From positions 1 to 62,643 of the forward strand of contig FLMG01002713.1 in NCBI GenBank assembly GCA_900088475.1: a stretch of DNA of 62,643 nt, given 5' to 3'. Positions 23,652 to 40,719 of the stretch are shown here, one piece after another (the first letter of the stretch is position 1; each line of letters opens with the position of its first letter). A model generated the notes under the pieces. The model made no database searches. It saw only the letters and a list, made by a program, of their open reading frames with translations, and was not told where the DNA came from. Position numbers and translations under genes: made by a program. The DNA comes from Hyphochytrium catenoides. Lineage: Eukaryota > Protista > Hyphochytriomycota.

Positions 23652-24819
23652 CTAGGGCCGAAGGACCGTGATGTTGGCCCCAGTCTTGACATCTTCGTCC
23701 GTCATAGAAAACAGTGCGTCCAGCAGATGGAGACGCAGGGTTCCTGGCCCTTTCACTTGCCCTGAGGCCATTGCCTTCTCTGCTGCTAATCCGAAGATTG
23801 ACATTGCGTAAGCCGTTGCCTCCAAGACTGACTCTTCTTCAGGTTTTGCGGCTATATACGCAGCGACTAGAGCCGTGACCGCACATCCAGAGGCGGTGAT
23901 CTGCTGGAGCATCGGCGCGCCGTTATTCACGGCAATGATGACATTGCCATCGGTAATATAGTCCGTCTTCCCTGATGCTCATAGATAAAAACGAGAGAAG
24001 TGCGGTATTTCAGAGATTCTGATGGAGTTTTCAGACACAGTAAATGTATGGAAAGGGTCTGAATTCTTGAGATTATTGGCCTTTTTCGATCTACCTGACA
24101 CAGCCACGACGCATTCATGCTTGAGGGCAAAGGCTTTGGCAACCTCAACAGCTGACTCTGCAGTGTCGGTACTATCAACGCCTTTACCGCTTCCTTGCGC
24201 CAAAGTGTGGCCTAAGGCTAAGATCTCTGAGGCGTTGCCTCGTACAACTGCAGGTTTGAAGCGAAGAAGATGCCTGCAGACGTCGGATCTGCAAGAAAAC
24301 GAGGGAACCTTAGGTAAATTCTGAAACGGAAGGACTGAGCGCCGAAGAGAGAGAGAAGCACAAAGGGCGGACTGACGGAGAGAGAGATGAGAAATCGAAC
24401 TAAGAAGAAAAAAAGGTCTCCGACAACAGACAGAGAGACGGACAGATATAGACAAACAGGCAGACAGACAAAGAACGGAGAGCCAGAGGGGAGAGAAAGC
24501 TCTAGAGAGTAAGAGAGAGTGAGGGGGAGAGAGAGAGAAAGAGAAAGAGAGAGAGAGAGAGAGTGTTCCCCACCTATACGAGGTTGCTCCTGCGCCGACA
24601 GGGTCCAGCACCCACTTCTTCCCTTCATCCTGCGCCACCCTGACCGCCAACTCGTAGCTCTGTGCCCATCGATCGTCTAAGGTCCCAATGTTGATCAGCA
24701 AACCGCCAGGAATCTTTCCAAACTCTTCCACTTCTTGCACCGCGTGGACCATCGCAGGACTGCAGCCGGCAGAGAGAAGAACCTGCCGGGAAAGTAGGGA
24801 GCGGACGGGCAAAGAAGAG

Positions 24820-26661: not shown

Positions 26662-26738
26662 TTACTGGGATCCAGCAGGGATAAACCGCTCAGGCGGAGT
26701 CCACTGTGCCCATAACAAAGAAAGAAAGAATGAAAGAA

Positions 26739-26773
<35 letters not shown>

Positions 26774-26890
26774 GAGAGAGAAGAGCAAGGGACATTAAGA
26801 GCAGTGTCAGCCTAAACAAAAAACTTGCTACAGCAATGAAACGACCCTTCCCTTTTTCTCCTCTCGCCATTCTCTGCCCCCATTCAACGT

Positions 26891-26948
<58 letters not shown>

Positions 26949-29213
26949 CTCACCTGGCTCTCTCCAGTCTCCATATTATAATAGTAGAAGGATTGGTTAT
27001 TCATGTCCCACTGCTGCAGCCACTGAACCGCTGACCGATCCTCCGCCTCCTTGGCTTTCCTCGCCTCTTCCGCAGCTCGTCTCTTCTCTTCATCTTCCAG
27101 ACGACGGACTTCTTTCTCCTCCTGGTGAGAGAGAAGAGAGAGAGAGAGGAAGTGTGCGTGAGAGAGAGAAGGAAGAATGAGAGAGAGAGGAGAGAGAGAG
27201 AGGAGAGAGAGAGAGAAAGAGAGGCAAATGGGGAAAGAGGGAAGAGAGAGAATGACTGAACTGTATCGCGAGAAGAATGTACACAGGGAAGAGGCTAGGG
27301 AGATTTGAAGATGAAGACAACACAAATGACAGGAAGAGAAAAAGATAGACAAACTTAATGAGAGAGAGAGAGAGAGAGAACAACCTTGTTGCGGGCGGAA
27401 GAGGAAGGGGAGGATACTCTCAGACAGATAAAGAGTGGCTAACAAGGGGACAGAGAGGAGAGAACGTGCAGGGAAATGACACAGAAGGGAAAGGAGAGAG
27501 AGTGAGAGAGAGAGAGAAAGAGAGATACGTACTTGCAACTTCCTCTCCTCGTCCTTGAATCTCTTCTCCACCTCCTCCGCTGCCTGGTTCATCTGCTCTT
27601 CAATGAGCACTTTCTGCGCCCGGATTCCTTTGAAGAGCTTGCTCTCTCCCACGAGAGAGAGAAACTCTTTCACTGGAGCGAGAGAGCGTGCGAGCTTGGA
27701 AGGAGGAGGAGGAGGTGGCGCCGGAGGTGTGGGCCACAGCTAACGGGGAAGAGAGAGCGAGAGGGAATGAGAGAGAAAAGAAGAGAGAAGAAGGGCCAGT
27801 TTTGTTAGAGAGAGAGAGAGATCGAATGACAAACGATAGGGAGAGAGATCCATGATGAATAAGAAAGGCAGGAAGTCAAACGGAGGAAGGAGAGAGAGAG
27901 AAATTGAGAGAGAGATCGCATGAGGAAAGGCAAAAGCAAGCGAGCTAATGACAGACAGTTAGAGGACAGAAGAGACACAGGGTAAAAGAAGCAAAAGGGA
28001 AGAGAGAGAGAGAATATTTGAAGAAGACAGAGAGAAAAAAGGGGCCAAAGAACGTTGCGCCCAGAGAGAGGCGCAGAAATAGAGACGGTAGAGAGAGAGA
28101 GAGAAAGACAGAGTCCTTACCTCCTTCAGGGTACACTCATAATTACTCTGGAGGATGAGTTGGAAAGGTCCTGTCATATCTTTGAGATAAGGCGCCAGGA
28201 GGAGAACATACGCCTGAGGCTCGAGGATCGCCTGGATCGTGACTTGTCTCTCTCTCACGGGAGGACCCGAATAATGAAGCACGTTCTTCTTTGACAGCTC
28301 ACGCACCTACGCAAGCAGAGAGAGGGGAGAGAGAGAAAAAGAGAGAGACAGAATAAGGGACAGAGAGAGAGAGAGAGAAAAAGAGAGAGAGAGAAAGAGA
28401 GAGGGAGAGAGAGAGAGAAGGAGAAAGAGAGGGGGAGAGANNNNNNNNNNNNNNNNNNNNNNNNNNNNNNNNNNNNNNNNNNNNNNNNNNNNNNNNNNNN
28501 NNNNNNNNNAAAGAACATCAGAAAGTGTGTAAAAAGGGATAATTAGCCATGCAGATGGTCCGACAGAGGAGGCCGACGAGAGAGAGACCAGCCATCGATA
28601 ATGTCATGCTAAGAAGGAGAGAGAGAACTAAAAAGAACTCTATCCTATCACGAGACAGACAGACAGACTGTGGGTGAGAAAGAGAGAGGGGAAGAGAGAG
28701 ACAGACAACGAGATGAAAGAAAGAGAGAGAGAGAGAGAGACAGAGTGTCGCGTCATCCCTCTTACCGGCACGGCCTTGTACTTATTTTCTGAAGCTGCCA
28801 AAAGCATGCAAACAGGGAGAATATCCGGGGGAGAGAGACCGTGCTCGTCGGCCTGGATAAGAGTGAGAAGCACTTCCGTGGGTCTCTCGATGATGAGAGA
28901 GAACTGAGGGTTCTCTCCTGGTTTGCAGTCACTGTTATGGCGAGAGGGAAGGCCCATTGTCTGGCCCCCTGAAAGACAGAGAGAAGAAGAGACAAGGAAG
29001 GGTGAGCTGAGGATAGAGTTGGAAGACGAAGGATTATCTTCTTACTCTCTCTCTCTCTTTACACACCCTCTAATGCTATTATGAATCCTTCTCTCCCTTT
29101 CTTTTTCTCTCTCTCTTTCCGCGTCTCCGCTGTCACTATCTCTGTCACCCTCTACACCTCTCCGTGTTCATGGCTTTGCTCTTCTCTGCCCCTTCCGCAC
29201 TGCCTCTCTCTCA

Positions 29214-29270
<57 letters not shown>

Positions 29271-30947
29271 CTCTTTCTACCATTACCTTTCCAGCTCCCG
29301 CAGATCTTCTTCGTCTTCCACTTCCTGGAGTCTCTATATTTGGCCACATAGAGCGTCCGAAAGCTATTGCAGAAGTCATCGAACGACATCCAGAATGTGT
29401 TGTCGTCCTCCTCCGTCTGCCCTAAGATATGACGCAGGCGAGAGGTCCAAAGAGGCGAGTCATCGCCCCAGTCGCCCTTCCATTCTGGATGATCGCCAGG
29501 AGGATTCCGAAGACGGAGGAGCTGATAGGAGTCGACCTCTCTCACGTCGAAGACCACGTAGCACTCCCCGAAGACCAGACCCATGTCCNNNNNNNNNNNN
29601 NNNNNNNNNNNNNNNNNNNNNNNNNNNNNNNNNNNNNNNNNNNNNNNNNNNNNNNNNNNNNNNNNNNNNNGAGAGAAGCAAACAGAAGTGAAGAAATAGA
29701 TGATAAGGGCCAGAGAGAGAGAGAGAGAGAGGGGGAGAAGCAGAGAGAAGAGAAGGAATAGGGGGATAGGGGAAGAGAGAAAGAGGTGAAATATAATTGA
29801 AGAAGAGTGAGATAGAGAAAGAAGGAGACGGACAGCAAGGGTAGAGAGAAGAGAATTGAAGAGTGGGAGAAGGAGTGAAAAAAGTGAGAGATGGAGTAAG
29901 AGGAAGGAGAGAGAGAAAGAGAAGGAAAGAGAGAGGAAGAGAGAGAGAGAGAGAGTAAGTAAGGGCGAACACGGGGGGAGACAAATGAACCGATTGGTTA
30001 GGTCAGGTGGCTCGAAGAACGATAAACGGACAAGGAAACGGAAGAGACATGTGTGAAAGGAGAGAGGTAAAGAAGAGAGCCTTCCCATGAAAGAAACAGT
30101 AGAAGATATTCGGGACGGCGAGGGATAGAAAAACTAAAAGTACCCCGAGAAAGGAAGAGAAAGAGAGAGGAAGGAAAGAGAAAGAAACAGAGAGAGAGAG
30201 AGAGAGACCTGGATCGTAGTGTCTGCTCCATCCTGGCTGATCGCTGTGGCTCCGATGAGGAACCGATTTTTCTTCCATCTCATCAGTTTGTACCAGAGAG
30301 CTTGCTTTGAGGCGCCGCGAGAGGTCTTGTTCAAGAATATTTGCTCAGAGGCAGCGCCTTTCAGGAGAGAGACGGAGACGGTGGGGAAGAGAGAGAGAGA
30401 GAGAGAGAGCAGAAGAGAGAGAGCATATATAGAAAGGTATGAGTACGGACAGTGGCGGTGCAAAGAGAGAATAAAAGTAAGAGAGAACTCGTGGAGAAAG
30501 AGAGAAAGGAATGAGAATATGAACAGAAACAGAGGGACAAGGGGAGCCTCATAGATAACAGTGTGAACTGTATAGACGGACGGAAGAAAGAGAGGCAGGG
30601 AGAGTTCTTTCTCTTTCTCTCTCTCTCTTACCGGTGAGATCGGTGAGCGCATGGTGGACGTATCCATCTTCTAACGCAGCGTAAGAGCCGTGATACTTAG
30701 CGTACGCCTTCTCAATAACGGGGACCCAGAGCTGCAAAGGAAAGAGAGAGAGAGAGAGAGTGAGAGGAGAAACACGAGCATGGGAGAGAAAGGGTTATCG
30801 TCTTTTCCTACTAAAGCATTGGCACTCATGCTCTCTCTTCCTTCTATCGGGCCCTATCCTCGTCATCTCTTTCTCTCTCTACGATCTCTCCCCCTCTCAC
30901 TGTTCCTCACTTTTCATTACGTCCATTGTTTCTGTCTCTCTCTTGAT

Positions 30948-30998
<51 letters not shown>

Positions 30999-31223
30999 GC
31001 CTGTTACCTCATTAAAATGCTTAGAGTATCCAAAGGCAGCGCCTAGACTTTCACTATCTTTGAACTCATCGGAGAGAACAGGAAAGTAATCGTCCACGAC
31101 CACGACCGCCCACTCGGAGTTCTTCCAGAACTGAACGGCGTAGGCGCCAGTCACTGATGTTGTCTTAGAGATGCAGAGAGAGTCGATCACAGGGCTAACA
31201 CTCTTGACCTTGGCGCCTGATGA

Positions 31224-31272
<49 letters not shown>

Positions 31273-31852
31273 GTGAGTGAGAAAAAGAAGGGATGAACAA
31301 GGAAGCGAGGAGAGACATCAAGCAACAGATTCATTAAAGCCGCCCAGGCGTACATAGAGAAAGAAAGAGAGAGAATGAGAGAGAGAGAAAGAGAGAAGAT
31401 GGACAGAGCAGAGAAGGGGTCAACAGCCCTTAGAGGTTTGAACATAGACAACCCACTCAATCACGAAGAGTAACACCTCAGAAGAGAGAGAAGCATAAAG
31501 CAAGAAAATAGCATACAGACGGAAGAGAGAGAGCAACCCAAAGAAAGAAGGAAAGAAAGAGAGAGAGGGAGAGAAAGAGACAGCACCACGGCCTTCTCAC
31601 CCTCTGAGGCTGCACAGATACTGAGGGCAGAGAGGAACCATCCGTCATTCAGCACGCCCTGGCGGACATCGTCCGGCTCCGTCCCGCCCTCGAACATGCA
31701 AGAATTGATGTTGATCGCCGCGGCCAAGCGCCAGTCAACCACGTCCGAGCGGTTTGCAATCTCTCCAATCGAGGAAATGTCAGGAGGAAAGTCAGGATCT
31801 TGGAACTGAAGAGCACGGCCAAACTGCCCAGGACGGCAGGACCAGCTGGGCG

Positions 31853-31903
<51 letters not shown>

Positions 31904-32425
31904 GGAATAGGGAATTAGTAGGAAGAAACACGGAGCGGATGCAGGCGCGAAGAGAAAAAATCTGACTTCTAAGTAGGCAGCGAGAGATAAGGACCACCAG
32001 AGCGAGCGAGCGGTAAGAGAGAGAGAGACAGAGAGAGAGAAAGAGACAGAGAGAGAGAGAGAAAGAGACAGAGAGAGAGAAAGAAGAGAGAGATGACACT
32101 GGCAAGACCGACAAGCGCACGATGAAAGGAGAAGAATGAGGCAAAAACGAAAGAGAGAGAGAGAGACTTACCCATTTGCAATCTCCATGAGTGCTTCCTC
32201 AGCGTTGATAAGAGTTTCATCTTTGTCTGGCGGCACCTGAATCCCTTGCTCCTGACGCCTCGACCGCCGAGCTGTGAACTCCAAGTAACGCCGGCGATGC
32301 ATGACCTAGCCCGCATAACAGAGGAGGGAAGAGAAGAGAGAGAGACAAGGAGAGAGAGAGAGAGAGAGAGAGAGGAGATGAAAGAAAGAGAGAGAGAGAG
32401 AGGATGAAAGAAAGAGAGAGAAAAG

Positions 32426-32467
<42 letters not shown>

Positions 32468-33070
32468 GAATAAAAAAAAGTGAGAACACAGAAGAGAAAG
32501 GGGAAGCTGAGTTTTACTGAAGTAAAGATAACCAACATGAAGTAAAAGAAAAAGAGAGAGAACGAGAGAGAGAGAGACAAGAGCCAGACTGAACAGACAG
32601 ACTAGGAACGCTTCTTCAGAGACTGGAGAAACAGAGGCAGTGAACCATAGAAAGTTTAGTCGGAGAAGTAGAGACCCAAAAGAAACAAAGGGAGAGAGAC
32701 CGAGAGAGAGAGAAAAATGGAGGCCGTCGAGCAATCTTTGGTTTGAGACTGAGCTAGAAGCGGGAGAGACGTGATTATTGAAAGAAAGGAAGACGTAGAG
32801 CTCACCTCTTCTCTCTGCTTTCTAAAGAGAAGGAGCTGGTCAGCATGAGCTTTTGCCTCATCGTCTTCCAGATCCGTGATGTTCTCTCTCTTCTCCTGGA
32901 GCTGGTCGAAGGCACGCTTCAAGGCGTTAAAGCGCTCTCTGAGAGGGAGAAAGGGTTCGCACGAGCAGAGAGAGAGAGAGAGAGAACGTGAGTACCTAGT
33001 AAGAGAGACATGAAAATGAAGGATCCATTGCGTACATCAGGTGTGAAACAGAGAGAAAGAGTGTGGGTGA

Positions 33071-33114
<44 letters not shown>

Positions 33115-33522
33115 GAGAGAGAGAAGGAGAGACAGAAAGAGAAAGAGAGAGAGAGAAAAAATGAGAGAGAGGGAGAGAGAAAGGGTGGAAGTACCTTTCG
33201 TCAGCAGTGAGAGACATGAGCCACACGGCCACGAGTGGGATGTCAATGGAGGCAAAGGATGCGGTCTTGAAGATGTCCCGAGGAGGTTTGATGCCGTTCG
33301 ACATAAGCTTGAACCGGTTCTCCCTACAGAGGGAGAGAGAGACGGAAAGGAGAGAGAGACCAAGAAAGAGAGAGAGAGTGATTGATCTTGTATGCTCTAC
33401 CCGTCTCTCCCTCACCTTCTTCTACTGTTCTCTTACTTCAGCATTGTGTCCCACTCTCTCTTCTCGTGACCTGCTTTTTGCTCTCTCCCTCTCTCCCTCC
33501 CTCTCTTGTCTCCGCCTTACTT

Positions 33523-33556
<34 letters not shown>

Positions 33557-33583
33557 ATTTTCTCTCTCTCTCTCTCTCTCTCA

Positions 33584-33624
<41 letters not shown>

Positions 33625-34163
33625 ATCGTCTCGTACCTCAAGAACTTCTGGAAGAGAACTCTCTGTCTCCTGATGACCGCCTCTGCCGTGTTGATAACGA
33701 TGAGTTGGAAGTGGATCATGGTCTGAATCTCTTCATAGTATTCCACGTCTAACTCTCTGTCTATGGCAGGCAAAGCTTGGAGGAACTTGCGCAGATCCGT
33801 GGGGGAAGAGAGAGAGAGAGAAGAGAGAGGGAGAGAGACAGGTGTGACAGGAGCTGGAGTCGTGGGAGAGGTAGGAGCTTCTGGGGCAACTTTCCCTTGA
33901 GCGGCATCTGATCGTGGCTTGAGGGAGTTGAACTGTGCGAGACGCGGTAGGGCAAGCGAAAGATGAGGGAGAGAGAAGGAGAGAGAAAAGGAGAGAGAAA
34001 GAGAGAGAATGAGTGAGAGACAAGAGTTTTGAAAGAAAACAATGAGAAGTCAGGAAAGATTGTGAGCATATTGAAGAACGGACCCAGGACGAAAGAGTTT
34101 TATAACAAGGGAGGTTCTGGCAACCAAAGAGAAAGAGAGTGGGGAAAAAAGAGAAAGAGAGAA

Positions 34164-34194
<31 letters not shown>

Positions 34195-34271
34195 AGACAT
34201 GACTAGCCAGTAAGCCGCCTATACCACTATCCATGCACTCCTCTCCCTATCCTCTCCTCTCTCTTAGCCAT

Positions 34272-34326
<55 letters not shown>

Positions 34327-34526
34327 TACCTGTTTGGCCAGTGTTTCTTTCACTGTTCCCCAGGCTTTGCTCTTCTCTCCCTGGCGAATCAGATGCTTGA
34401 AAGCTCCGAAGCCGACTAAAAAGGCGAAAGGACCTTTTGAAGCGTGCAGCGTGTCTTCCAACGCCGTCTGGAAGTCAAAGAGACCGTCAGGACGGCGGAT
34501 TCGTGTCTCCATGAGTCCTGTGTGTT

Positions 34527-34581
<55 letters not shown>

Positions 34582-35125
34582 GGGAAGGCGAGAGAGAGGT
34601 AAAGCGGGAGAAGAGGAGAGGGGTAGAGAGAGAGAGAGAGAGTCATTTCAGTCCGACCCTATGTATAAGAGAACGAAAGGAAGGAAAGAAGGAGAGAAAG
34701 TGAATCACATTCGACGGTTAAGCGAAGATGGAAACAGACTGGGGGATGAGGGAAGGAAGTAAAGAGAGAGAGAGAGAGAAGAGAGACCTTTGATGTATTC
34801 CTTAGCCTTTGCCTTTGCTCTCTCTTTCGCCGTCAGCTCTTTCAACTCCTTCTCTCTCTGTTCGTCTCTTTGTCTCTTCTCTTCTTCTCTCTTCTTCTTA
34901 AGGCCAAGTTTCTCTTCCTCTTCATCGGAGAGAAAGGAACAATTGCTGAGAAACTGAAGAAGTTTGTCGCTAAGTTCTCTCGCGCTGTATCTCTTCAGCA
35001 CGCCTGTTCTCCCTTCTAATTCCAAGCTTTTCTTTAGAAGTTCGGCTCTCACGCGACCAAAAGCGAGGCGCTCGTACTCCATCTCTGCCTGGAGCTCTAG
35101 GAATTCTTTGTCCACCTGTTGCGAA

Positions 35126-35159
<34 letters not shown>

Positions 35160-35211
35160 CGAGAGAGAGAGAGAGAGAACGAGAGAGAGAGAGAGGGGTG
35201 GATGGGGGAAG

Positions 35212-35249
<38 letters not shown>

Positions 35250-36284
35250 AGAGAGAAGAAGAAGGGTTTAAGAGAGAGCAAGGGTATGGGGTGACGCAAG
35301 TAACATACGGGGTTGCGGGGATAACAAAAGAGAGAAAGAGAAAGAGAAAGAAAGCAAGACAGGAAAGAAATGTTGAGAGGAAGGAGAGGGCAAAGAGAGA
35401 CACATCAGAAGAGAGGGAGAAGAATGTCAGTTCGGATTGAGAAAGAGAGAAATGTACAAGGAAGAGATCCAGGGACATAAGGAGCGGAAAAGAAAGAGAG
35501 AGAGAGACAGAGAAGGAGAGAGAGAAGAGAGAGAGAGAGACTTACCCATTCTTTGCAGATGATGTTCAGGGGCGCTCTCCTCTGGTCAAAGGACTTTCTG
35601 ACCTGCTCCGCTGTCTCTTTCATCTGCAGCTCAGCCACGTACTGGACGGCCGTTCCCATCATGCGAGGCGTGACAGAGCAGAGATTGGCAATAAAGCCTG
35701 GGGGAAGGGAGAGAGAGAGCGTAAGGGAGACACAATGAAATGACCGCCAAGAGAGAGAGAGAGAAGAAGAACAGAAGAGACACAGGGAGAGAGAGAGAGA
35801 GAAAAGAGAAAGGAGAAGGTGTGCAAAGCCCGTGAGGTGATTGACTGTCTCCCCTTTTTAACCTTCGCCATTCCTTTTTACTAGTGACACCTTTCCGTCG
35901 CCTCTCTTCCCTCGTTTTTTATTTCTCTTCTCTCTCTTTCTCTCTCTCTCTCTCTCTTTTTCTCTCTCTCTCCCTGGTGCTTACCAGTGAAGGCCAAGAG
36001 GACGAGAGAGCATAGTCCAATGCCAAAGCCCAGCGGATCGACAAACATCGTGGCAAATGTTCCCCAGATAAAAGCCACGAAGAAGAAGAGAAAGACATTT
36101 CTCACTCCCTCGTTCTCTCCCTTCACTGTGTTACTCTCCGCGTCGAAAGAGTAAATAGGAAAGATGAAAGGAGAGTAGAAGATGGTGGCGTCCGGGGGAC
36201 GGAGGAGGAAAGAGGCAAGTGCTGTGCCACCAATCCTCAGGAGAAGAAGGACAAAGGCGACTGTTTGATAGTTCAGATTAGGGG

Positions 36285-36315
<31 letters not shown>

Positions 36316-36635
36316 GAGAGAGAAATGAAGAGGAGAGAAGAGGCAAAAGAAAACAAAGTCAGTGCGGACTCTCTTTCCTCTTCCTAGGTGCCCCGTTGCC
36401 CACTCAATCAAGGAGCCGACCTACCGTTTTTCTTCTCTGTTATTGCTGTTTCGTTTCTCTCTCTTTAGCTGCTTCTCTTTCTCCTTCTCTCTTTTGCTGT
36501 CTCTCTCTTTTTTATATCCCTCTCTCTTCCCATTTAGTTGCCCAGTCTCCCTCACGTTGGTTTTGTCTTACTTCCCATTCATTCTATTACTTTTCTCTTT
36601 TTTCCTCTCCTCCCGGAGTCTCTTGTACTGTCCTC

Positions 36636-36687
<52 letters not shown>

Positions 36688-37863
36688 TCGTCTCTCACCT
36701 GTCGACGCGAAGAAGAGAGTCTCTGCCTGAAAGAAGCCAATCAGTCCCGCGAGAAGCGCTGCTCCATTGATAATGAAAAGCGCTTGCCTCTGATACTTCG
36801 GAGAGAGATAAAAGTCATTCTCCGCCCAGCGGAAAGAGAAATAGAGAAGAAAGAGAAAGAAAGAGAGAATGAGAGAGAGAAGAAGACCCGAGAGGACATT
36901 CCCCCAGATGTAAACAATGAAGACGAGCAATGCCCAGCCGGAAGAATAGAGAGGAACAAGCTTCTTCTTGGTGAAGAGAGAGAGAGAGTACTTGTCCTCT
37001 CTCCATTTGACGATAGCGGCCACTGATCCTACGAGGAGAGGATAGAAAAAGAAGAGAGAGAAGACAAAGAGAGTCCACACGCTGTTGACGTCTGCCTCCA
37101 CGACTTCTGCCCAGAAGACCCAGAGAGAGATGAAAGAGACGAAGAAAGAGAACTTCAGGCTCAGAAACATGTCCTCTGTCCATTTGAAGACGTAGAAGTA
37201 CTTGACCACCTAGAGAGAAGAGGGAAAGACCACCAGAGAGCAAAGAGAGAGAGAAGGGGAGAGAGAGAGAGAGAAAGAGAGGGAGGGACGGAGAGGGAGA
37301 GAGAGGGAGAGAGAGAGTAAAAAGGAGGGAGAAGCGGGAGAAACGGAGGAAACGAGATAGAAAAGAACAAGAGAGAAAGAGGAGTGAGTTGAGGTATGTG
37401 AAAGGGGAGCAAGATTGTAAAAATTCGGAAGAGAGAGAGAGAGACCTTCGCATCTCTCTCTCGCCCTCCCTTATCGCCCCAAGATAGCCCTCAAGTTATC
37501 CATAGCGCTTTTGCAGTGCTACACGCTCATCCTCTTCCTTCCTTTTTAATTGCTCTCTCTCTCTCTCCTCTCTAACCTAACAGTCCGTCATCCTCTCTCT
37601 CTCTCTCTCTTTGTGTCTCTCTTTCTTTCTCTCTCTTCTTGGACCACCTACCGGCGCGAGAGAGAAGATGAGGATGTAGGAGACAACCCAGAACGTATGG
37701 CCAGCCCAGGTAGGCTCCTGTGTGTAAGCCGTGATGACGCCGAAGAGGAAGAGAGAAAAAAGAAGAGACCCGAAGGCAATAAGGACCGCGTACTCTTCCT
37801 CGAGGAGATAACCACCTTTAATACCGTCCCAGAGGGTCATGCTGTGGGCAAAGGGCAAAAAGC

Positions 37864-37914
<51 letters not shown>

Positions 37915-38399
37915 CGCAGAACATACAGTTAGCAGAAGTGTAGGAAGAGCACTTGGAGGTCATGCTGGGAGAGAGAAAAGACCAAGGAGAGGGAGAGGGA
38001 GAAAGAGAAGAGAGAACGAGAGATTGTGGGGTGGAGCATTGAGTCACAAGAAATGTCAGGGAAAGAACAGACGACAAGATTCGCTCTCAGGAGAGAAGAG
38101 AGAGAGAAGTAAGCTGACTCACTTTGCGTAGGGATTCTCTTCTTCATCCCCTTCTTTCTTTTCTTCTTCTCCCTTCTCTGGAGCGACGTCAACCTTGGCC
38201 TGCCAAGGCTGAGGCGAGACAGAAGACGGAAGAGAGAGTAGAGGAGAGAGAAAGAGAGAGAAAGAGAGAAAGGATAAGTCGATGATGAGACCACTTACCG
38301 TTTGAGAGTGTCTGCCAGAGCTGAGATAGAACTAGTCTGAAAGGGAGAGAGTGACACAAATGGAGAGAATAGAAGAGAGAAATCTTGACTTTAGAAAAA

Positions 38400-38431
<32 letters not shown>

Positions 38432-39560
38432 CCCTTTCAAACCTTCATTTTCAGAGCCTTTCCCATCTTGGTTCCCGCCAGTCTGTTGTGCAGGAGAAAC
38501 ACGGCAACCTTCACCTTGACGCGGGAGACAGAGAGAAAGGCGACAGTGCGGACAAAAGAGAGACGGAGAAACGCAAGGATCCGAATGGAGAGAGAGACGA
38601 AAAAAGACGCGGTGCGGGCCTTCATTATGTCTAACTTCGTCTCTGCAGCGTCAATGACGAAGCCGTTAAGATTATGAGAAGCGAGAGACGGAGGGGAACC
38701 AATTGAGAGAGAGAGAGAGAGAGAAGAAATAGGAGAATAGCCAGTGTCAGTTTAGGAATTGATAGAGAGAGAGAGTGTGTGAGAGAGAAGCGCTCAAAAC
38801 AGTTGTTAGAGAAGAGAGAGACTAACAAGGAGAAAGATTCTTCCCCATAGAGAGAGAGAGAGAGAGAGAGNNNNNNNNNNNNNNNNNNNNNNNNNNNNNN
38901 NNNNNNNNNNNNNNNNNNNNNNGAAAGAGAGAGAGGGAGAGAGACAGAGAGAGAGAAAGAGAGACAGAGAGAGGGAGAGAGAAAAAAAAAAAGAGAGAGA
39001 GAAAAAGAGAGAGAGAAAGAAATAGAGAGAGAAAGAAATAGAGAGAGAACCAAAGAGAGAGAGAAAGAAATAGAGAAAGGAGAGAGAAGTTGACAAGTGG
39101 AGAGGGGGATGAGGGAGAGGGACAAGGCGACAGAAGAGTAAGGGTAAAGGCCACCTGCCAGAAGAATAAGATGGGAGATGGCACAGAAGAGAAAGAAATA
39201 AGGAAGAGAGAAAGTTGGTCGTACTCTTCTCAGGAATAGCGGGCGGCGTCTTTTCTTCTTTCCCCTTTTCGCCATCTTTAGCCTTCTCTCTCTCTTCCTC
39301 TGTCTTGTTCTTCTCTTTCTCTGCGGCGGCTTTCTCCGCCTCCTGCGCCTCTTTCTCTGCATTCTGAATTCTCTTCTCTGTCTCTTCTTCTTCTTCTTCC
39401 TCTTCTTCTCCTTCTTCTTCTTCTCCCTCCTTCGGAACTCCTCCTAGCGCGGGCATCTTGATCTCTCCCTCTCCCTGTTCCTCTTGATCGACTCCAGGAA
39501 GAGCAAATTGTTGGCCTGCTCTCTCCGCAGCACTCGACTAGTAACAGAAAGAGAGAGAGG

Positions 39561-39592
<32 letters not shown>

Positions 39593-40039
39593 AAGAGAAA
39601 GGAAGGCGGGACAGAGAGACAGCGAGGAAGAGATAGAGAAGAATGGGGAAGGGTCAATGCCAAGACGAGAGAGAGAGAGACCGGCATCAGGAAGAAGAGA
39701 AAGAGACGAAAGACTGTGTTCTGGCAGAATGAGAGAAAAATTGAATAGAGAGGAAGACAGAGTGCGAGAGGACAAAATCCACACGGAGAGAGAGAGAGGG
39801 TGAAGAGAGGGTGTCGAGAGAGAGAGAGAGAGAGAGAGTTTTCTCCTAGGAAACAAACATAATTATGGCCTACCTCTTCTTCCTCGTCTTCTTCTTCCTC
39901 CACATCTTTAGGCGGCCACTGGACCAGTTGGAAGTCGTTTGCCCGCCAGCGCGTGACGACGAATGTGCCCAGCAGGACAAAGATAGGGAAGAAGATAGAG
40001 AGAAGAAGAGTCTACAGAAGCAGAGATTTCAGGAGAACG

Positions 40040-40076
<37 letters not shown>

Positions 40077-40684
40077 TTACTGTTTGGCCGGGTGGAGGGT
40101 GGAGGTCAAGCCTGTGCAACCAGATAAACGGATCGGAGAAAAGACCGAGAAAGAGAGAGAGAAAGAGAGAGAAAGAGAGAGAAAGAGAGAGAACAAAGAG
40201 ACAGAGATACACAAGAGAGCAACCCAAAAGCGACACAAAGAGAGAGAACAAGAGAGCCCAAACCTCCAAACCCACAGTGGAGAACTTCATGGCAAGAGCA
40301 AAGAGAGAAAGAGTGGTAACTATTTACAGAGAGTTAAAGAGAGAGAAGGAGAGAAGGGGAGAGAGAGAGAGAGAAAGAAAGAGGAAAGGACACTTACCAT
40401 GGAAGAGTTGGTGGCTCCATAGATGAGAAGGCCAGAGCAGACCAACATTATCTCAAAGACTACCGCCAAGATGTACGGGATTTTGAACTAGAGCAAGACA
40501 GGAAGAGAGAGAGAGAGAGAGAGACAAGTAAGAGAAAGAAGAGGAGTGCGACAGAGTGGAAGGGAAGTGCAAGGTGGAAAGCAAAGGACTGCACACAAGA
40601 CTTGAGAGAGAGAGAAGAACTGAGGAAGAGAGAATAGATAGAAAACTGTTGCATTCTTTCAAGTAGAACAACCTTCTGGAAAAG

Positions 40685-40719
<35 letters not shown>

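What the first reader, a model, noticed from the sequence alone, without database searches (positions are those of the whole stretch)
29498..31670. The DEK1-like membrane calpain has lost its catalytic Cys and His: a candidate pseudoprotease
Seen: the calpain motif QGxLGDCWFLSA reads QGVLNDGWFLSAL (GGA, Gly, at 31643-31641). GLxxGHAYSV reads GLVFGECYVV (GAG, Glu, at 29566-29564). RNPWG reads RNPPG (Asn kept, Trp lost). Established: calpain CysPc needs the Cys-His-Asn triad, and plant DEK1 function depends on the catalytic Cys. The rest of the domain (DPDFPP, DDYFP, EKAYAK, EWKGDW, FWMSFDDF) is intact and the roughly 40-exon frame has no stop. Inference: a maintained non-catalytic scaffold or substrate-binding module rather than a decaying gene. 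The Cys next to the lost His leaves a rearranged active site as a remote alternative.
Basis: partly seen in the sequence, partly recalled or inferred. Interest (0 to 1): 0.82.

Follow-up and report, generated by a model that had tools for sequence, protein, structure and literature searches.

The report
Ancient dead membrane calpain of stramenopiles
This gene encodes a large membrane protein whose calpain protease domain lacks two of its three cutting residues. That state is shared by about 120 relatives across stramenopiles and was reported for brown algae and oomycetes in 2026, so it is a real but ordinary new member of a known dead-enzyme family.

Summary
Five minus-strand exons (31845-29287) splice into a 330-residue calpain CysPc domain. 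It has Gly (GGA, 31643-31641) at the catalytic Cys, Glu (GAG, 29566-29564) at the His, Asn kept, and Pro at the Trp.

The gap at 29589-29670 is intronic. A read contig supplies the acceptor AG, and exon 5 starts at 29587 in phase with exon 4.

The gene (about 49413-26662) is collinear with Saprolegnia SPRG_05401. Its layout is C2, multi-pass membrane region, linker, CysPc, then WW. This is the published Type 3/4 membrane-anchored calpain, not DEK1 itself.

The losses are old. 119 of 120 relatives lack both Cys and His, and 120 of 121 sequences keep the RNPPG motif. These relatives span oomycetes, brown algae, chrysophytes, Triparma, Hondaea and Cafeteria.

The domain is under strong constraint. 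dN/dS is 0.023 in a Saprolegnia pair, and the window keeps 57 of 58 near-invariant residues.

Loss of the canonical Cys and His in brown algae and oomycetes was published in 2026, with a "shifted triad" as an alternative. Here the shifted Cys is missing from 21 of 121 sequences, including this one, and the oxyanion Gln is relaxed. A true pseudoprotease is therefore favoured.

The scan noted other dead calpains in this genome, of different architecture, but not this gene.

The parts
26662..49413 (-). Whole gene (approximate 5' limit). It encodes a C2-MEM-Linker-CysPc-(CBSW-like)-WW membrane calpain homologue. The stop codon TAA is at 26664-26662.
   Evidence: 30 collinear tblastn blocks against Saprolegnia, Aphanomyces, Phytophthora and other orthologues, covering P0001 residues 38-2460. 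The last exon and stop were read directly.
49099..49353 (-). Exon carrying the N-terminal C2 domain.
   Evidence: Pfam PF00168 at 24.5 bits against a cut-off of 22.
35543..45885 (-). Multi-pass membrane (MEM) region, split over many exons.
   Evidence: Collinear with the MEM region of P0001. A crude Kyte-Doolittle scan finds 18 hydrophobic 19-residue windows in the conserved blocks.
31601..31845 (-). CysPc exon 1 (PC1 start). It holds QGVLNDGWFLSA.
   Evidence: Pfam PF00648 profile positions 1-69 at 40.5 bits. Alignment to 1mdw.
31641..31643 (-). GGA, Gly at the catalytic Cys position.
   Evidence: Reads show no other letter.
31008..31216 (-). CysPc exon 2. It begins with a clade-specific 8-residue insertion and contains DDYFP.
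   Evidence: Pfam PF00648 profile positions 84-117. The insertion is absent from all 28 canonical comparators.
30632..30731 (-). CysPc exon 3 (EKAYAK ... GYVHHALTDLTG).
   Evidence: Pfam PF00648 profile positions 129-161. Alignment to the calpain-3 core.
30651..30656 (-). CAC CAT, the His-His pair typical of the clade. The second His sits where classical calpains have a Glu.
   Evidence: His in 102 and 95 of 121 sequences. The second His aligns with the E of TTEAMEDFT in calpain-3.
30209..30357 (-). CysPc exon 4. It ends in phase 0 (ATC CAG|GT).
29589..29670 (.). Assembly gap. It lies wholly inside the CT-repeat intron between exons 4 and 5.
   Evidence: The contig's loose end supplies the acceptor. 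No residue is missing relative to P0001.
29287..29587 (-). CysPc exon 5 (PC2). It holds GLVFGECYVV, RNPPG, EWKGDW and FWMSFDDF.
   Evidence: Pfam PF00648 profile positions 210-296 at 72.1 bits. Alignments to 1mdw and 6p3q. The donor site was read.
29564..29566 (-). GAG, Glu at the catalytic His position.
   Evidence: Reads show no other letter.
29498..29506 (-). AAT CCT CCT. Asn of the triad is kept and Pro replaces the calpain Trp.
   Evidence: Asn and Pro are each present in 120 of 121 family sequences.
28121..28968 (-). Two exons (28968-28766 and 28306-28121) that align to the domain-III/CBSW-like region of the orthologues.
   Evidence: tblastn to P0001 residues 2237-2362. Splice sites were read. 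The window's exons give no Pfam hit, and P0001 scores 19.2 bits against a cut-off of 21 for PF01067.
26662..27121 (-). WW domain, split over exon 27121-26954 and the last exon 26703-26662 (...YYYNMETGESQ | WTPPERF...).
   Evidence: Pfam PF00397 at 16.5 bits on the first part alone. The second Trp and the Pro lie in the last exon. Orthologues end the same way.

Best explanation
[quoted passage not shown] The family's CysPc domain lost the catalytic Cys and His once, before the radiation of stramenopiles, and has been kept since as a folded, strongly constrained non-proteolytic module.

Shown here:
- The substitutions are real.
- The gene's exons are intact.
- The loss is clade-wide.
- The calpain fold is predicted with confidence for an orthologue.
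- The domain is under strong purifying selection.
- The oxyanion-hole Gln is relaxed.
- No alternative nucleophile is conserved.

Inferred:
- Acidic residues that align with the Ca2+ ligands of classical calpains remain at 97% or more (window domain positions D59, E269, D276, D296).
- The domain therefore most likely still works as a Ca2+-responsive conformational or binding module, tethered to the membrane by the MEM region.
- It would pass signals on through protein binding (cleft, WW domain, C2 domain) rather than by cutting substrates, as mammalian CAPN6 and inactive insect calpains do.
For: - Catalytic positions were mapped on solved calpains and on Pfam PF00648.
- Reads from two samples show no variant at these codons.
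- The gene is collinear with SPRG_05401 in 30 blocks and carries C2 and WW domains.
- Among 30 representatives at 50% clustering, the Cys position is G, S, A, L, Q, T, D, E, H or Y. The His position is A, S, E, Q, R, T or I. Asn and Pro are fixed.
- Among 120 relatives at 90% clustering, 119 lack both Cys and His. They include Cafeteria, Hondaea, Triparma, Ectocarpus, Chrysoparadoxa and many oomycetes. Chrysophytes were identified among the representatives.
- The C/H-less rows form one clade with SH-aLRT 100 and a stem length of 0.76. The window's end branch equals the median, 0.46.
- dN/dS between Saprolegnia parasitica and S. diclina is 0.023 for CysPc against 0.053 for the whole protein, at dS 0.34.
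- 58 positions are conserved at 97% or more, and the window keeps 57 of them.
- The oxyanion Gln is Q in only 32 of 121 sequences, against 28 of 28 canonical comparators.
- An AlphaFold model of the Aphanomyces stellatus domain (64% identical to the window) has pLDDT 88 and pTM 0.88. It matches calpain cores at TM 0.71-0.79, including Ca2+-bound 1kxr at rmsd 3.1 Å.
Against: - No RNA data exist for this organism in the runs offered, so expression and the splice model are unconfirmed.
- dN/dS could not be measured in the window's own lineage, because the closest relative is only 64% identical.
- No biochemical test has been done.
- The His-His pair and several Cys residues are conserved in most members. 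The authors of PMC13413365 read this as a possible non-canonical triad.
- Ca2+ binding is inferred from alignment and from my recollection of the classical ligand set. It was not measured.
- The structure model is of an orthologue, not of this protein, and its coordinates could not be inspected.
Confidence: 0.8

Rival explanations
1. The domain is still a protease and uses a rearranged, non-canonical triad: an upstream Cys in PC1 and the His-His pair, with the retained Asn. This is the proposal made for brown algal and oomycete calpains in PMC13413365.
For: - The His-His pair is present in the window and in 102 and 95 of 121 relatives.
- Asn is fixed.
- The domain is very strongly constrained.
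- Oomycetes mostly carry Cys at window-domain position 29, and many ochrophytes carry it at position 31 or 40.
Against: - The candidate Cys sits at three different alignment positions in different lineages.
- It is absent at all of them in 21 of 121 sequences, including this window (Ile, Asn, Leu), Hondaea, Cafeteria and Triparma.
- The oxyanion Gln and the Gly residues flanking the catalytic residues are relaxed.
- The first His of the pair also occurs in canonical, active TM calpains.
- The second His aligns with a Glu of classical calpains that, from my knowledge of the structures, is a Ca2+ ligand and not a cleft residue. In the model it lies in a helix at residues 176-184.
- The second His is F, Q, G, M, D, L or Y in 26 of 121 sequences.
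Confidence: 0.1
2. The copy in this genome is a decaying or unexpressed pseudogene, or its odd codons are assembly errors beside a gap.
For: - An assembly gap lies 23 bases from the Glu codon.
- No RNA run is available.
- Glu at the His position is rare in the family: only this sequence among the 121, plus P0031 among the representatives.
Against: - The gap is intronic and the frame carries across it.
- All checked splice sites are GT-AG and in phase.
- No stop occurs in 30 collinear blocks, apart from three places where a homology block runs on into an intron.
- 57 of 58 family-invariant residues are kept.
- The branch length is at the median.
- Contigs from two samples, at depths of about 150-250 and 11-23, show no other letters.
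Confidence: 0.04
3. The conserved His residues (His-His at 177-178 and Asp-His at 266-267 of the domain) form a new metal-binding or pH-sensing site that replaces one classical Ca2+ site and gives the dead domain a new regulatory input.
For: - His177, His178 and His267 are common in the dead clade but not in canonical comparators.
- The second His replaces a Glu that I recall as a Ca2+ ligand.
Against: - The two motifs show no co-variation.
- Several members lack one or both His residues.
Confidence: 0.05

Closest known systems
Type 3/4 membrane-anchored calpains of oomycetes and brown algae: C2-TML-CysPc(-CBSW)-WW (Zhao 2012, PMC3563603; Safranek 2023, PMC10762896; Life 2026, PMC13413365)
   Same: - It has the same domain order: C2, multi-pass membrane region, linker, CysPc, WW.
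- It is collinear with Saprolegnia SPRG_05401, and CysPc identity to Saprolegnia and Aphanomyces is 62-64%.
- It shows the same loss of the canonical Cys and His, with Asn kept, the RNPPG motif and the His-His pair.
   Different: - It has Glu rather than Ala, Ser or Thr at the His position.
- It has no Cys at any of the 'shifted' positions.
- It keeps the oxyanion Gln.
- The gene is split into many short exons with CT-repeat introns, whereas the Saprolegnia genes are almost intronless.
- It branches near the base of the oomycete-like subclade.
[quoted passage not shown]
   Same: - It is a giant multi-pass membrane anchor joined by a linker to a C-terminal CysPc domain.
- CysPc identity is about 40% (P0132).
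   Different: - DEK1 has an intact Cys-His-Asn triad and RNPWG. From the literature, it needs the Cys for function.
- DEK1 has no N-terminal C2 domain and no WW domain.
- The window protein lies in a separate, long-stemmed clade.
Mammalian CAPN6 and catalytically inactive insect calpains (e.g. Rhodnius Calpain A/B2, PMC11387712)
   Same: These are calpain-fold proteins that lost the nucleophile yet are conserved and functional without proteolysis.
   Different: - They are cytosolic, have different domain partners and lost activity independently.
- In CAPN6 only the Cys is replaced. Here Cys, His, Trp and the oxyanion Gln are all changed or relaxed.

Membership tests
Calpain superfamily (Pfam PF00648 Peptidase_C2 / CysPc) | Significant match to the CysPc profile over PC1 and PC2 | tested here: met
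   Exon scores are 40.5, 28.1, 36.0 and 72.1 bits against a cut-off of 23.8, covering profile positions 1-296. The orthologue P0001 scores 202 bits over positions 1-297.
Calpain superfamily (Pfam PF00648 Peptidase_C2 / CysPc) | Two-lobed papain-like protease-core fold | tested here: met
   Tested on the Aphanomyces stellatus orthologue domain (64% identical), not on the window's own sequence. pLDDT is 88 and TM is 0.71-0.79 to calpain-1, -3, -5 and -9 cores.
Calpain superfamily, as an active peptidase | Cys-His-Asn catalytic triad | tested here: not met
   Gly is at the Cys position, Glu is at the His position and Asn is kept.
Calpain superfamily, as an active peptidase | Ca2+-dependent proteolytic activity | not testable with these tools
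   This needs a recombinant protein assay.
[quoted passage not shown] | N-terminal C2 domain | tested here: met
   PF00168 scores 24.5 bits against a cut-off of 22 on window 49353-49099.
[quoted passage not shown] | Large multi-pass transmembrane region before the linker | tested here: inconclusive
   The region is collinear with the MEM region of orthologues. A crude hydropathy scan finds 18 hydrophobic windows. No dedicated TM predictor was run and the exon model is incomplete.
[quoted passage not shown] | C-terminal WW domain | tested here: met
   PF00397 scores 16.5 bits on the first WW exon alone. The last exon supplies the second Trp and the Pro, and orthologues end the same way. The score of the joined domain could not be obtained because no reference exists for the spliced sequence.
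[quoted passage not shown] | CBSW (Calpain_III) domain, which separates Type 4 from Type 3 | tested here: inconclusive
   The two window exons align to that region of P0001 but give no Pfam hit. P0001 scores 19.2 bits, below the cut-off of 21. Several relatives carry a precomputed PF01067 hit.
[quoted passage not shown] | Placement inside the clade in a CysPc tree | tested here: met
   The window lies inside the clade of 32 C/H-less rows (SH-aLRT 100) and within a 7-row oomycete-like subclade (97). This is the quick IQ-TREE search only.
Plant-type DEK1 (Type 2) | Intact triad and a MEM-Linker-CysPc-CBSW layout without C2 or WW | tested here: not met
   The triad is lost and both C2 and WW are present. 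DEK1-like representatives P0132 and P0092 fall outside the clade.
Pseudoprotease (conserved non-peptidase homologue) | Catalytic residues lost while the domain stays under purifying selection | tested here: met
   The loss is clade-wide. dN/dS is 0.023 in a Saprolegnia pair. The window keeps 57 of 58 invariant residues. Selection in the window's own lineage was not measurable.

The most novel reading that the evidence does not exclude
The whole stramenopile C2-TM-calpain clade is a true pseudoprotease that arose before Bigyra and Gyrista split. Its conserved His residues, one of them replacing a classical Ca2+-ligand Glu, would form a new metal- or pH-sensing site. This would turn a membrane protease into a non-cutting sensor. 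The window's copy lacks every proposed 'shifted' Cys and so serves as the natural control that rules out the non-canonical-triad idea.
Probability: 0.07. Interest if true: 0.6.

Novelty: new member of a known kind. Interest (0 to 1): 0.3.

Why it matters
Membrane-anchored calpains outside plants have no known function, and many of them belong to crop and fish pathogens or to brown algae. Recent reviews still discuss them as proteases or as possible non-canonical proteases.

This gene adds a deep-branching member that lacks every candidate replacement Cys. With the wider sampling done here (Cafeteria, Hondaea, Triparma, chrysophytes), the loss of catalysis looks ancestral to stramenopiles. The domain has nevertheless been kept under very strong constraint.

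That shifts the useful question from 'what does it cut' to 'what does it bind or sense'. It is an incremental point, not a new kind of system.

Tried and rejected
- RNA evidence: the run search returned only DNA-like runs of one study and no RNA holder. Expression and splicing remain untested.
- The window's own protein: it was not among 139 full-length relatives. I therefore could not fold or search the spliced window protein by reference and did not type it in. The Aphanomyces stellatus orthologue was folded instead.
- Co-variation between the His-His and Asp-His motifs: no pattern was found.
- Cys next to the lost His as an alternative nucleophile: rejected. It is Cys in only 63 of 121 sequences and the canonical residue there is Ala.
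- Any other universally conserved Cys or Ser specific to the dead clade: none was found. C307 is present in 114 of 121 sequences and C316 in 112 of 121. C316 is shared with active calpains and is Ala in the window.
- Careful maximum-likelihood tree: it did not finish within the time limit, so only the quick tree is reported.
- Complete exon-by-exon gene model: not built. About a third of the orthologue's length, mostly poorly conserved loops, is not placed.

Full report
**1. The observation**

On the minus strand, five exons splice with GT-AG sites and matching phases into a 330-residue open frame:
- E1: 31845-31601
- E2: 31216-31008
- E3: 30731-30632
- E4: 30357-30209
- E5: 29587-29287

Four of the five exons match Pfam Peptidase_C2 above its cut-off. 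Together they cover profile positions 1-296 of 297.

Alignments to solved calpain cores place the residues as follows:
- Gly of LNDGW (GGA, 31643-31641) lies on the catalytic Cys.
- Glu of FGECY (GAG, 29566-29564) lies on the catalytic His.
- Asn of RNPPG (29506-29504) lies on the catalytic Asn.
- Pro (29500-29498) lies on the calpain Trp.

**2. The assembly gap**

The gap at 29589-29670 lies 23 bases upstream of the Glu codon.
- A Logan contig that covers 29281-29588 continues with TGAATGAAGAGAGAG on the + strand.
- On the gene's strand this is a CT repeat followed by TTCATTCA and then G. The acceptor AG ends at 29588 and E5 starts at 29587 in phase 0.
- E4 also ends in phase 0.
- The Saprolegnia orthologue aligns across the junction without a missing residue: residues 2127-2129 correspond to I, Q | D.

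The gap is intronic. DNA contigs of two samples from one study cover all five exons and show no other letters. These runs are probably the source of the assembly, so they exclude a consensus error but are not independent. No RNA run was offered.

**3. The gene**

tblastn with ten orthologues gives 30 collinear blocks from about 49413 to 26954. The last exon (26703-26662) ends in TAA.
- Pfam finds a C2 domain at 49353-49099 and a WW domain at 27097-26963.
- The second Trp and the Pro of the WW domain lie in the last exon, and the orthologues end the same way.
- The conserved blocks between these domains hold 18 hydrophobic windows.
- Two exons align to the domain-III-like region of the orthologues, but Pfam does not recognise them.

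[quoted passage not shown] It was described for stramenopiles by Zhao et al. 2012 (PMC3563603) and named Type 3/4 membrane-anchored calpain by Safranek et al. 2023 (PMC10762896). It is not DEK1 itself, which has an intact triad and neither C2 nor WW.

**4. Relatives**

An exhaustive HMMER search with exon 5 found 4676 calpain-like proteins. About 60 of the best 150 carry RNPPG.

In an alignment of 61 full domains:
- 30 sequences, the window included, share the RNP[P/A]G motif and lack the His. Two more divergent rows also lack both Cys and His.
- Their Cys position holds G, S, A, L, Q, T, D, E, H or Y.
- Their His position holds A, S, E, Q, R, T or I.
- Asn and Pro are almost fixed.
- 28 canonical comparators have C, H, N and (27 of 28) W.

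In a quick IQ-TREE tree:
- The 32 C/H-less rows form one clade with SH-aLRT 100 on a long stem (0.76).
- The window falls in a 7-row subclade with Saprolegnia and Albugo (support 97).
- Its end branch is 0.46, equal to the median.

A second search at 90% clustering gave 120 further full-length relatives with names:
- They include many oomycetes, Ectocarpus, Chrysoparadoxa, Triparma, Hondaea (a labyrinthulomycete) and Cafeteria (a bigyran). Chrysophytes had been identified among the earlier representatives.
- 119 of the 120 lack both Cys and His.

The loss therefore predates the stramenopile radiation.

**5. Maintained or decaying**

- Between Saprolegnia parasitica and S. diclina, dN/dS is 0.023 for CysPc. 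It is 0.059 for the membrane block, 0.076 for the linker and 0.053 overall, at dS of about 0.34-0.46.
- 58 domain positions are conserved at 97% or more in the family, and the window keeps 57 of them.
- An AlphaFold model of the Aphanomyces stellatus domain (64% identical to the window) has pLDDT 88 and pTM 0.88. It matches calpain cores at TM 0.71-0.79.
- In that model a helix starts exactly at the former Cys position, and a strand starts next to the former His position.

The domain is a folded, constrained module, not a relic.

**6. Dead, or rewired**

A 2026 paper (PMC13413365) and its preprint already report that brown algal and oomycete DEK1-like calpains lack the canonical Cys and His. 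They raise a shifted Cys about 38-40 columns upstream, and a His-His pair, as a possible non-canonical triad.

I tested this on the wider sample:
- The upstream Cys sits at three different positions in different lineages (window-domain positions 29, 31 and 40).
- It is absent at all of them in 21 of 121 sequences. These include the window (Ile, Asn, Leu), Hondaea, Cafeteria and Triparma.
- The His-His pair is common (102 and 95 of 121) and present in the window.
- The first His of the pair also occurs in active TM calpains.
- The second His aligns with a Glu of classical calpains. I recall that Glu as a ligand of Ca2+ site 1, not a cleft residue.
- The oxyanion-hole Gln is Q in only 32 of 121 sequences, against 28 of 28 active ones. 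The Gly residues flanking Cys and His are also relaxed.

Relaxation of the whole catalytic apparatus, with no conserved substitute nucleophile, is the usual signature of a pseudoenzyme.

**7. How it likely works (inference)**

Acidic residues that align with classical Ca2+ ligands stay at 97% or more (D59, E269, D276, D296). The most likely role is therefore a Ca2+-responsive, non-cutting conformational or binding module. It would be held at the membrane by the MEM region and flanked by a C2 and a WW domain. This is comparable in principle to CAPN6 and to inactive insect calpains (PMC11387712). None of it was measured.

**8. Verdict**

- The phenomenon is family-wide and already published for oomycetes and brown algae.
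- New here are one more, early-branching member with an unusual Glu at the His site, the extension of the loss to Bigyra and other ochrophytes, and sequence evidence against the shifted-triad idea.
- Earlier notes of this scan mention other dead calpains of different architecture elsewhere in this genome, and the C2/ectodomain front of this same gene. I did not test those beyond the C2 domain.

Noticed in passing
window 29589-29670 and introns throughout 26000-50000: The introns of this gene are full of (CT)n repeats on the coding strand. The gap I examined sits in one of these repeats, and read contigs break at them. The window has 13 such gaps in all.
   Followed up: partly
window 23655-23978 (minus strand), probably extending to about 25000: The next gene downstream encodes a hydroxyethylthiazole kinase (thiamine salvage). 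Pfam PF02110 scores 69.5 bits on its last exon.
   Followed up: partly
window 30865-30898 (intron between CysPc exons 2 and 3): A short stretch has contig depth about ten times that of its surroundings, and many contigs run off into unrelated sequence. This suggests a dispersed repeat inside the intron.
   Followed up: no
window about 31216-31190 and 31066-31046 (CysPc domain residues 82-89 and 133-139): Two short insertions are present in the dead clade and absent from nearly all of the 28 canonical comparators. One lies just after the former catalytic helix and one lies after DDYFP. The first is less conserved in the window than in its relatives.
   Followed up: no
P0091 and P0077 (Logan assemblies): Two representatives of the clade have also lost the Asn, which is now Tyr. 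This matches the Fucaceae state described in PMC13413365.
   Followed up: no
P0087 and P0139: Two calpains outside the clade show separate losses. One has Ser at the Cys position with His kept. The other has Asn and Ser at the two positions.
   Followed up: no
P0200 (Aphanomyces astaci, 3208 aa) and P0202 (Lagenidium, 3920 aa): These orthologue models carry extra phospholipase D or F-box parts. They are probably neighbouring genes merged during annotation.
   Followed up: no
model me139390e815e compared with PDB 7sqc: After the calpains, the next Foldseek matches are proteins of the Chlamydomonas ciliary central-pair C1 apparatus, at TM 0.34 and E about 1e-5. This may be a calpain-like domain in a structural role.
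   Followed up: no
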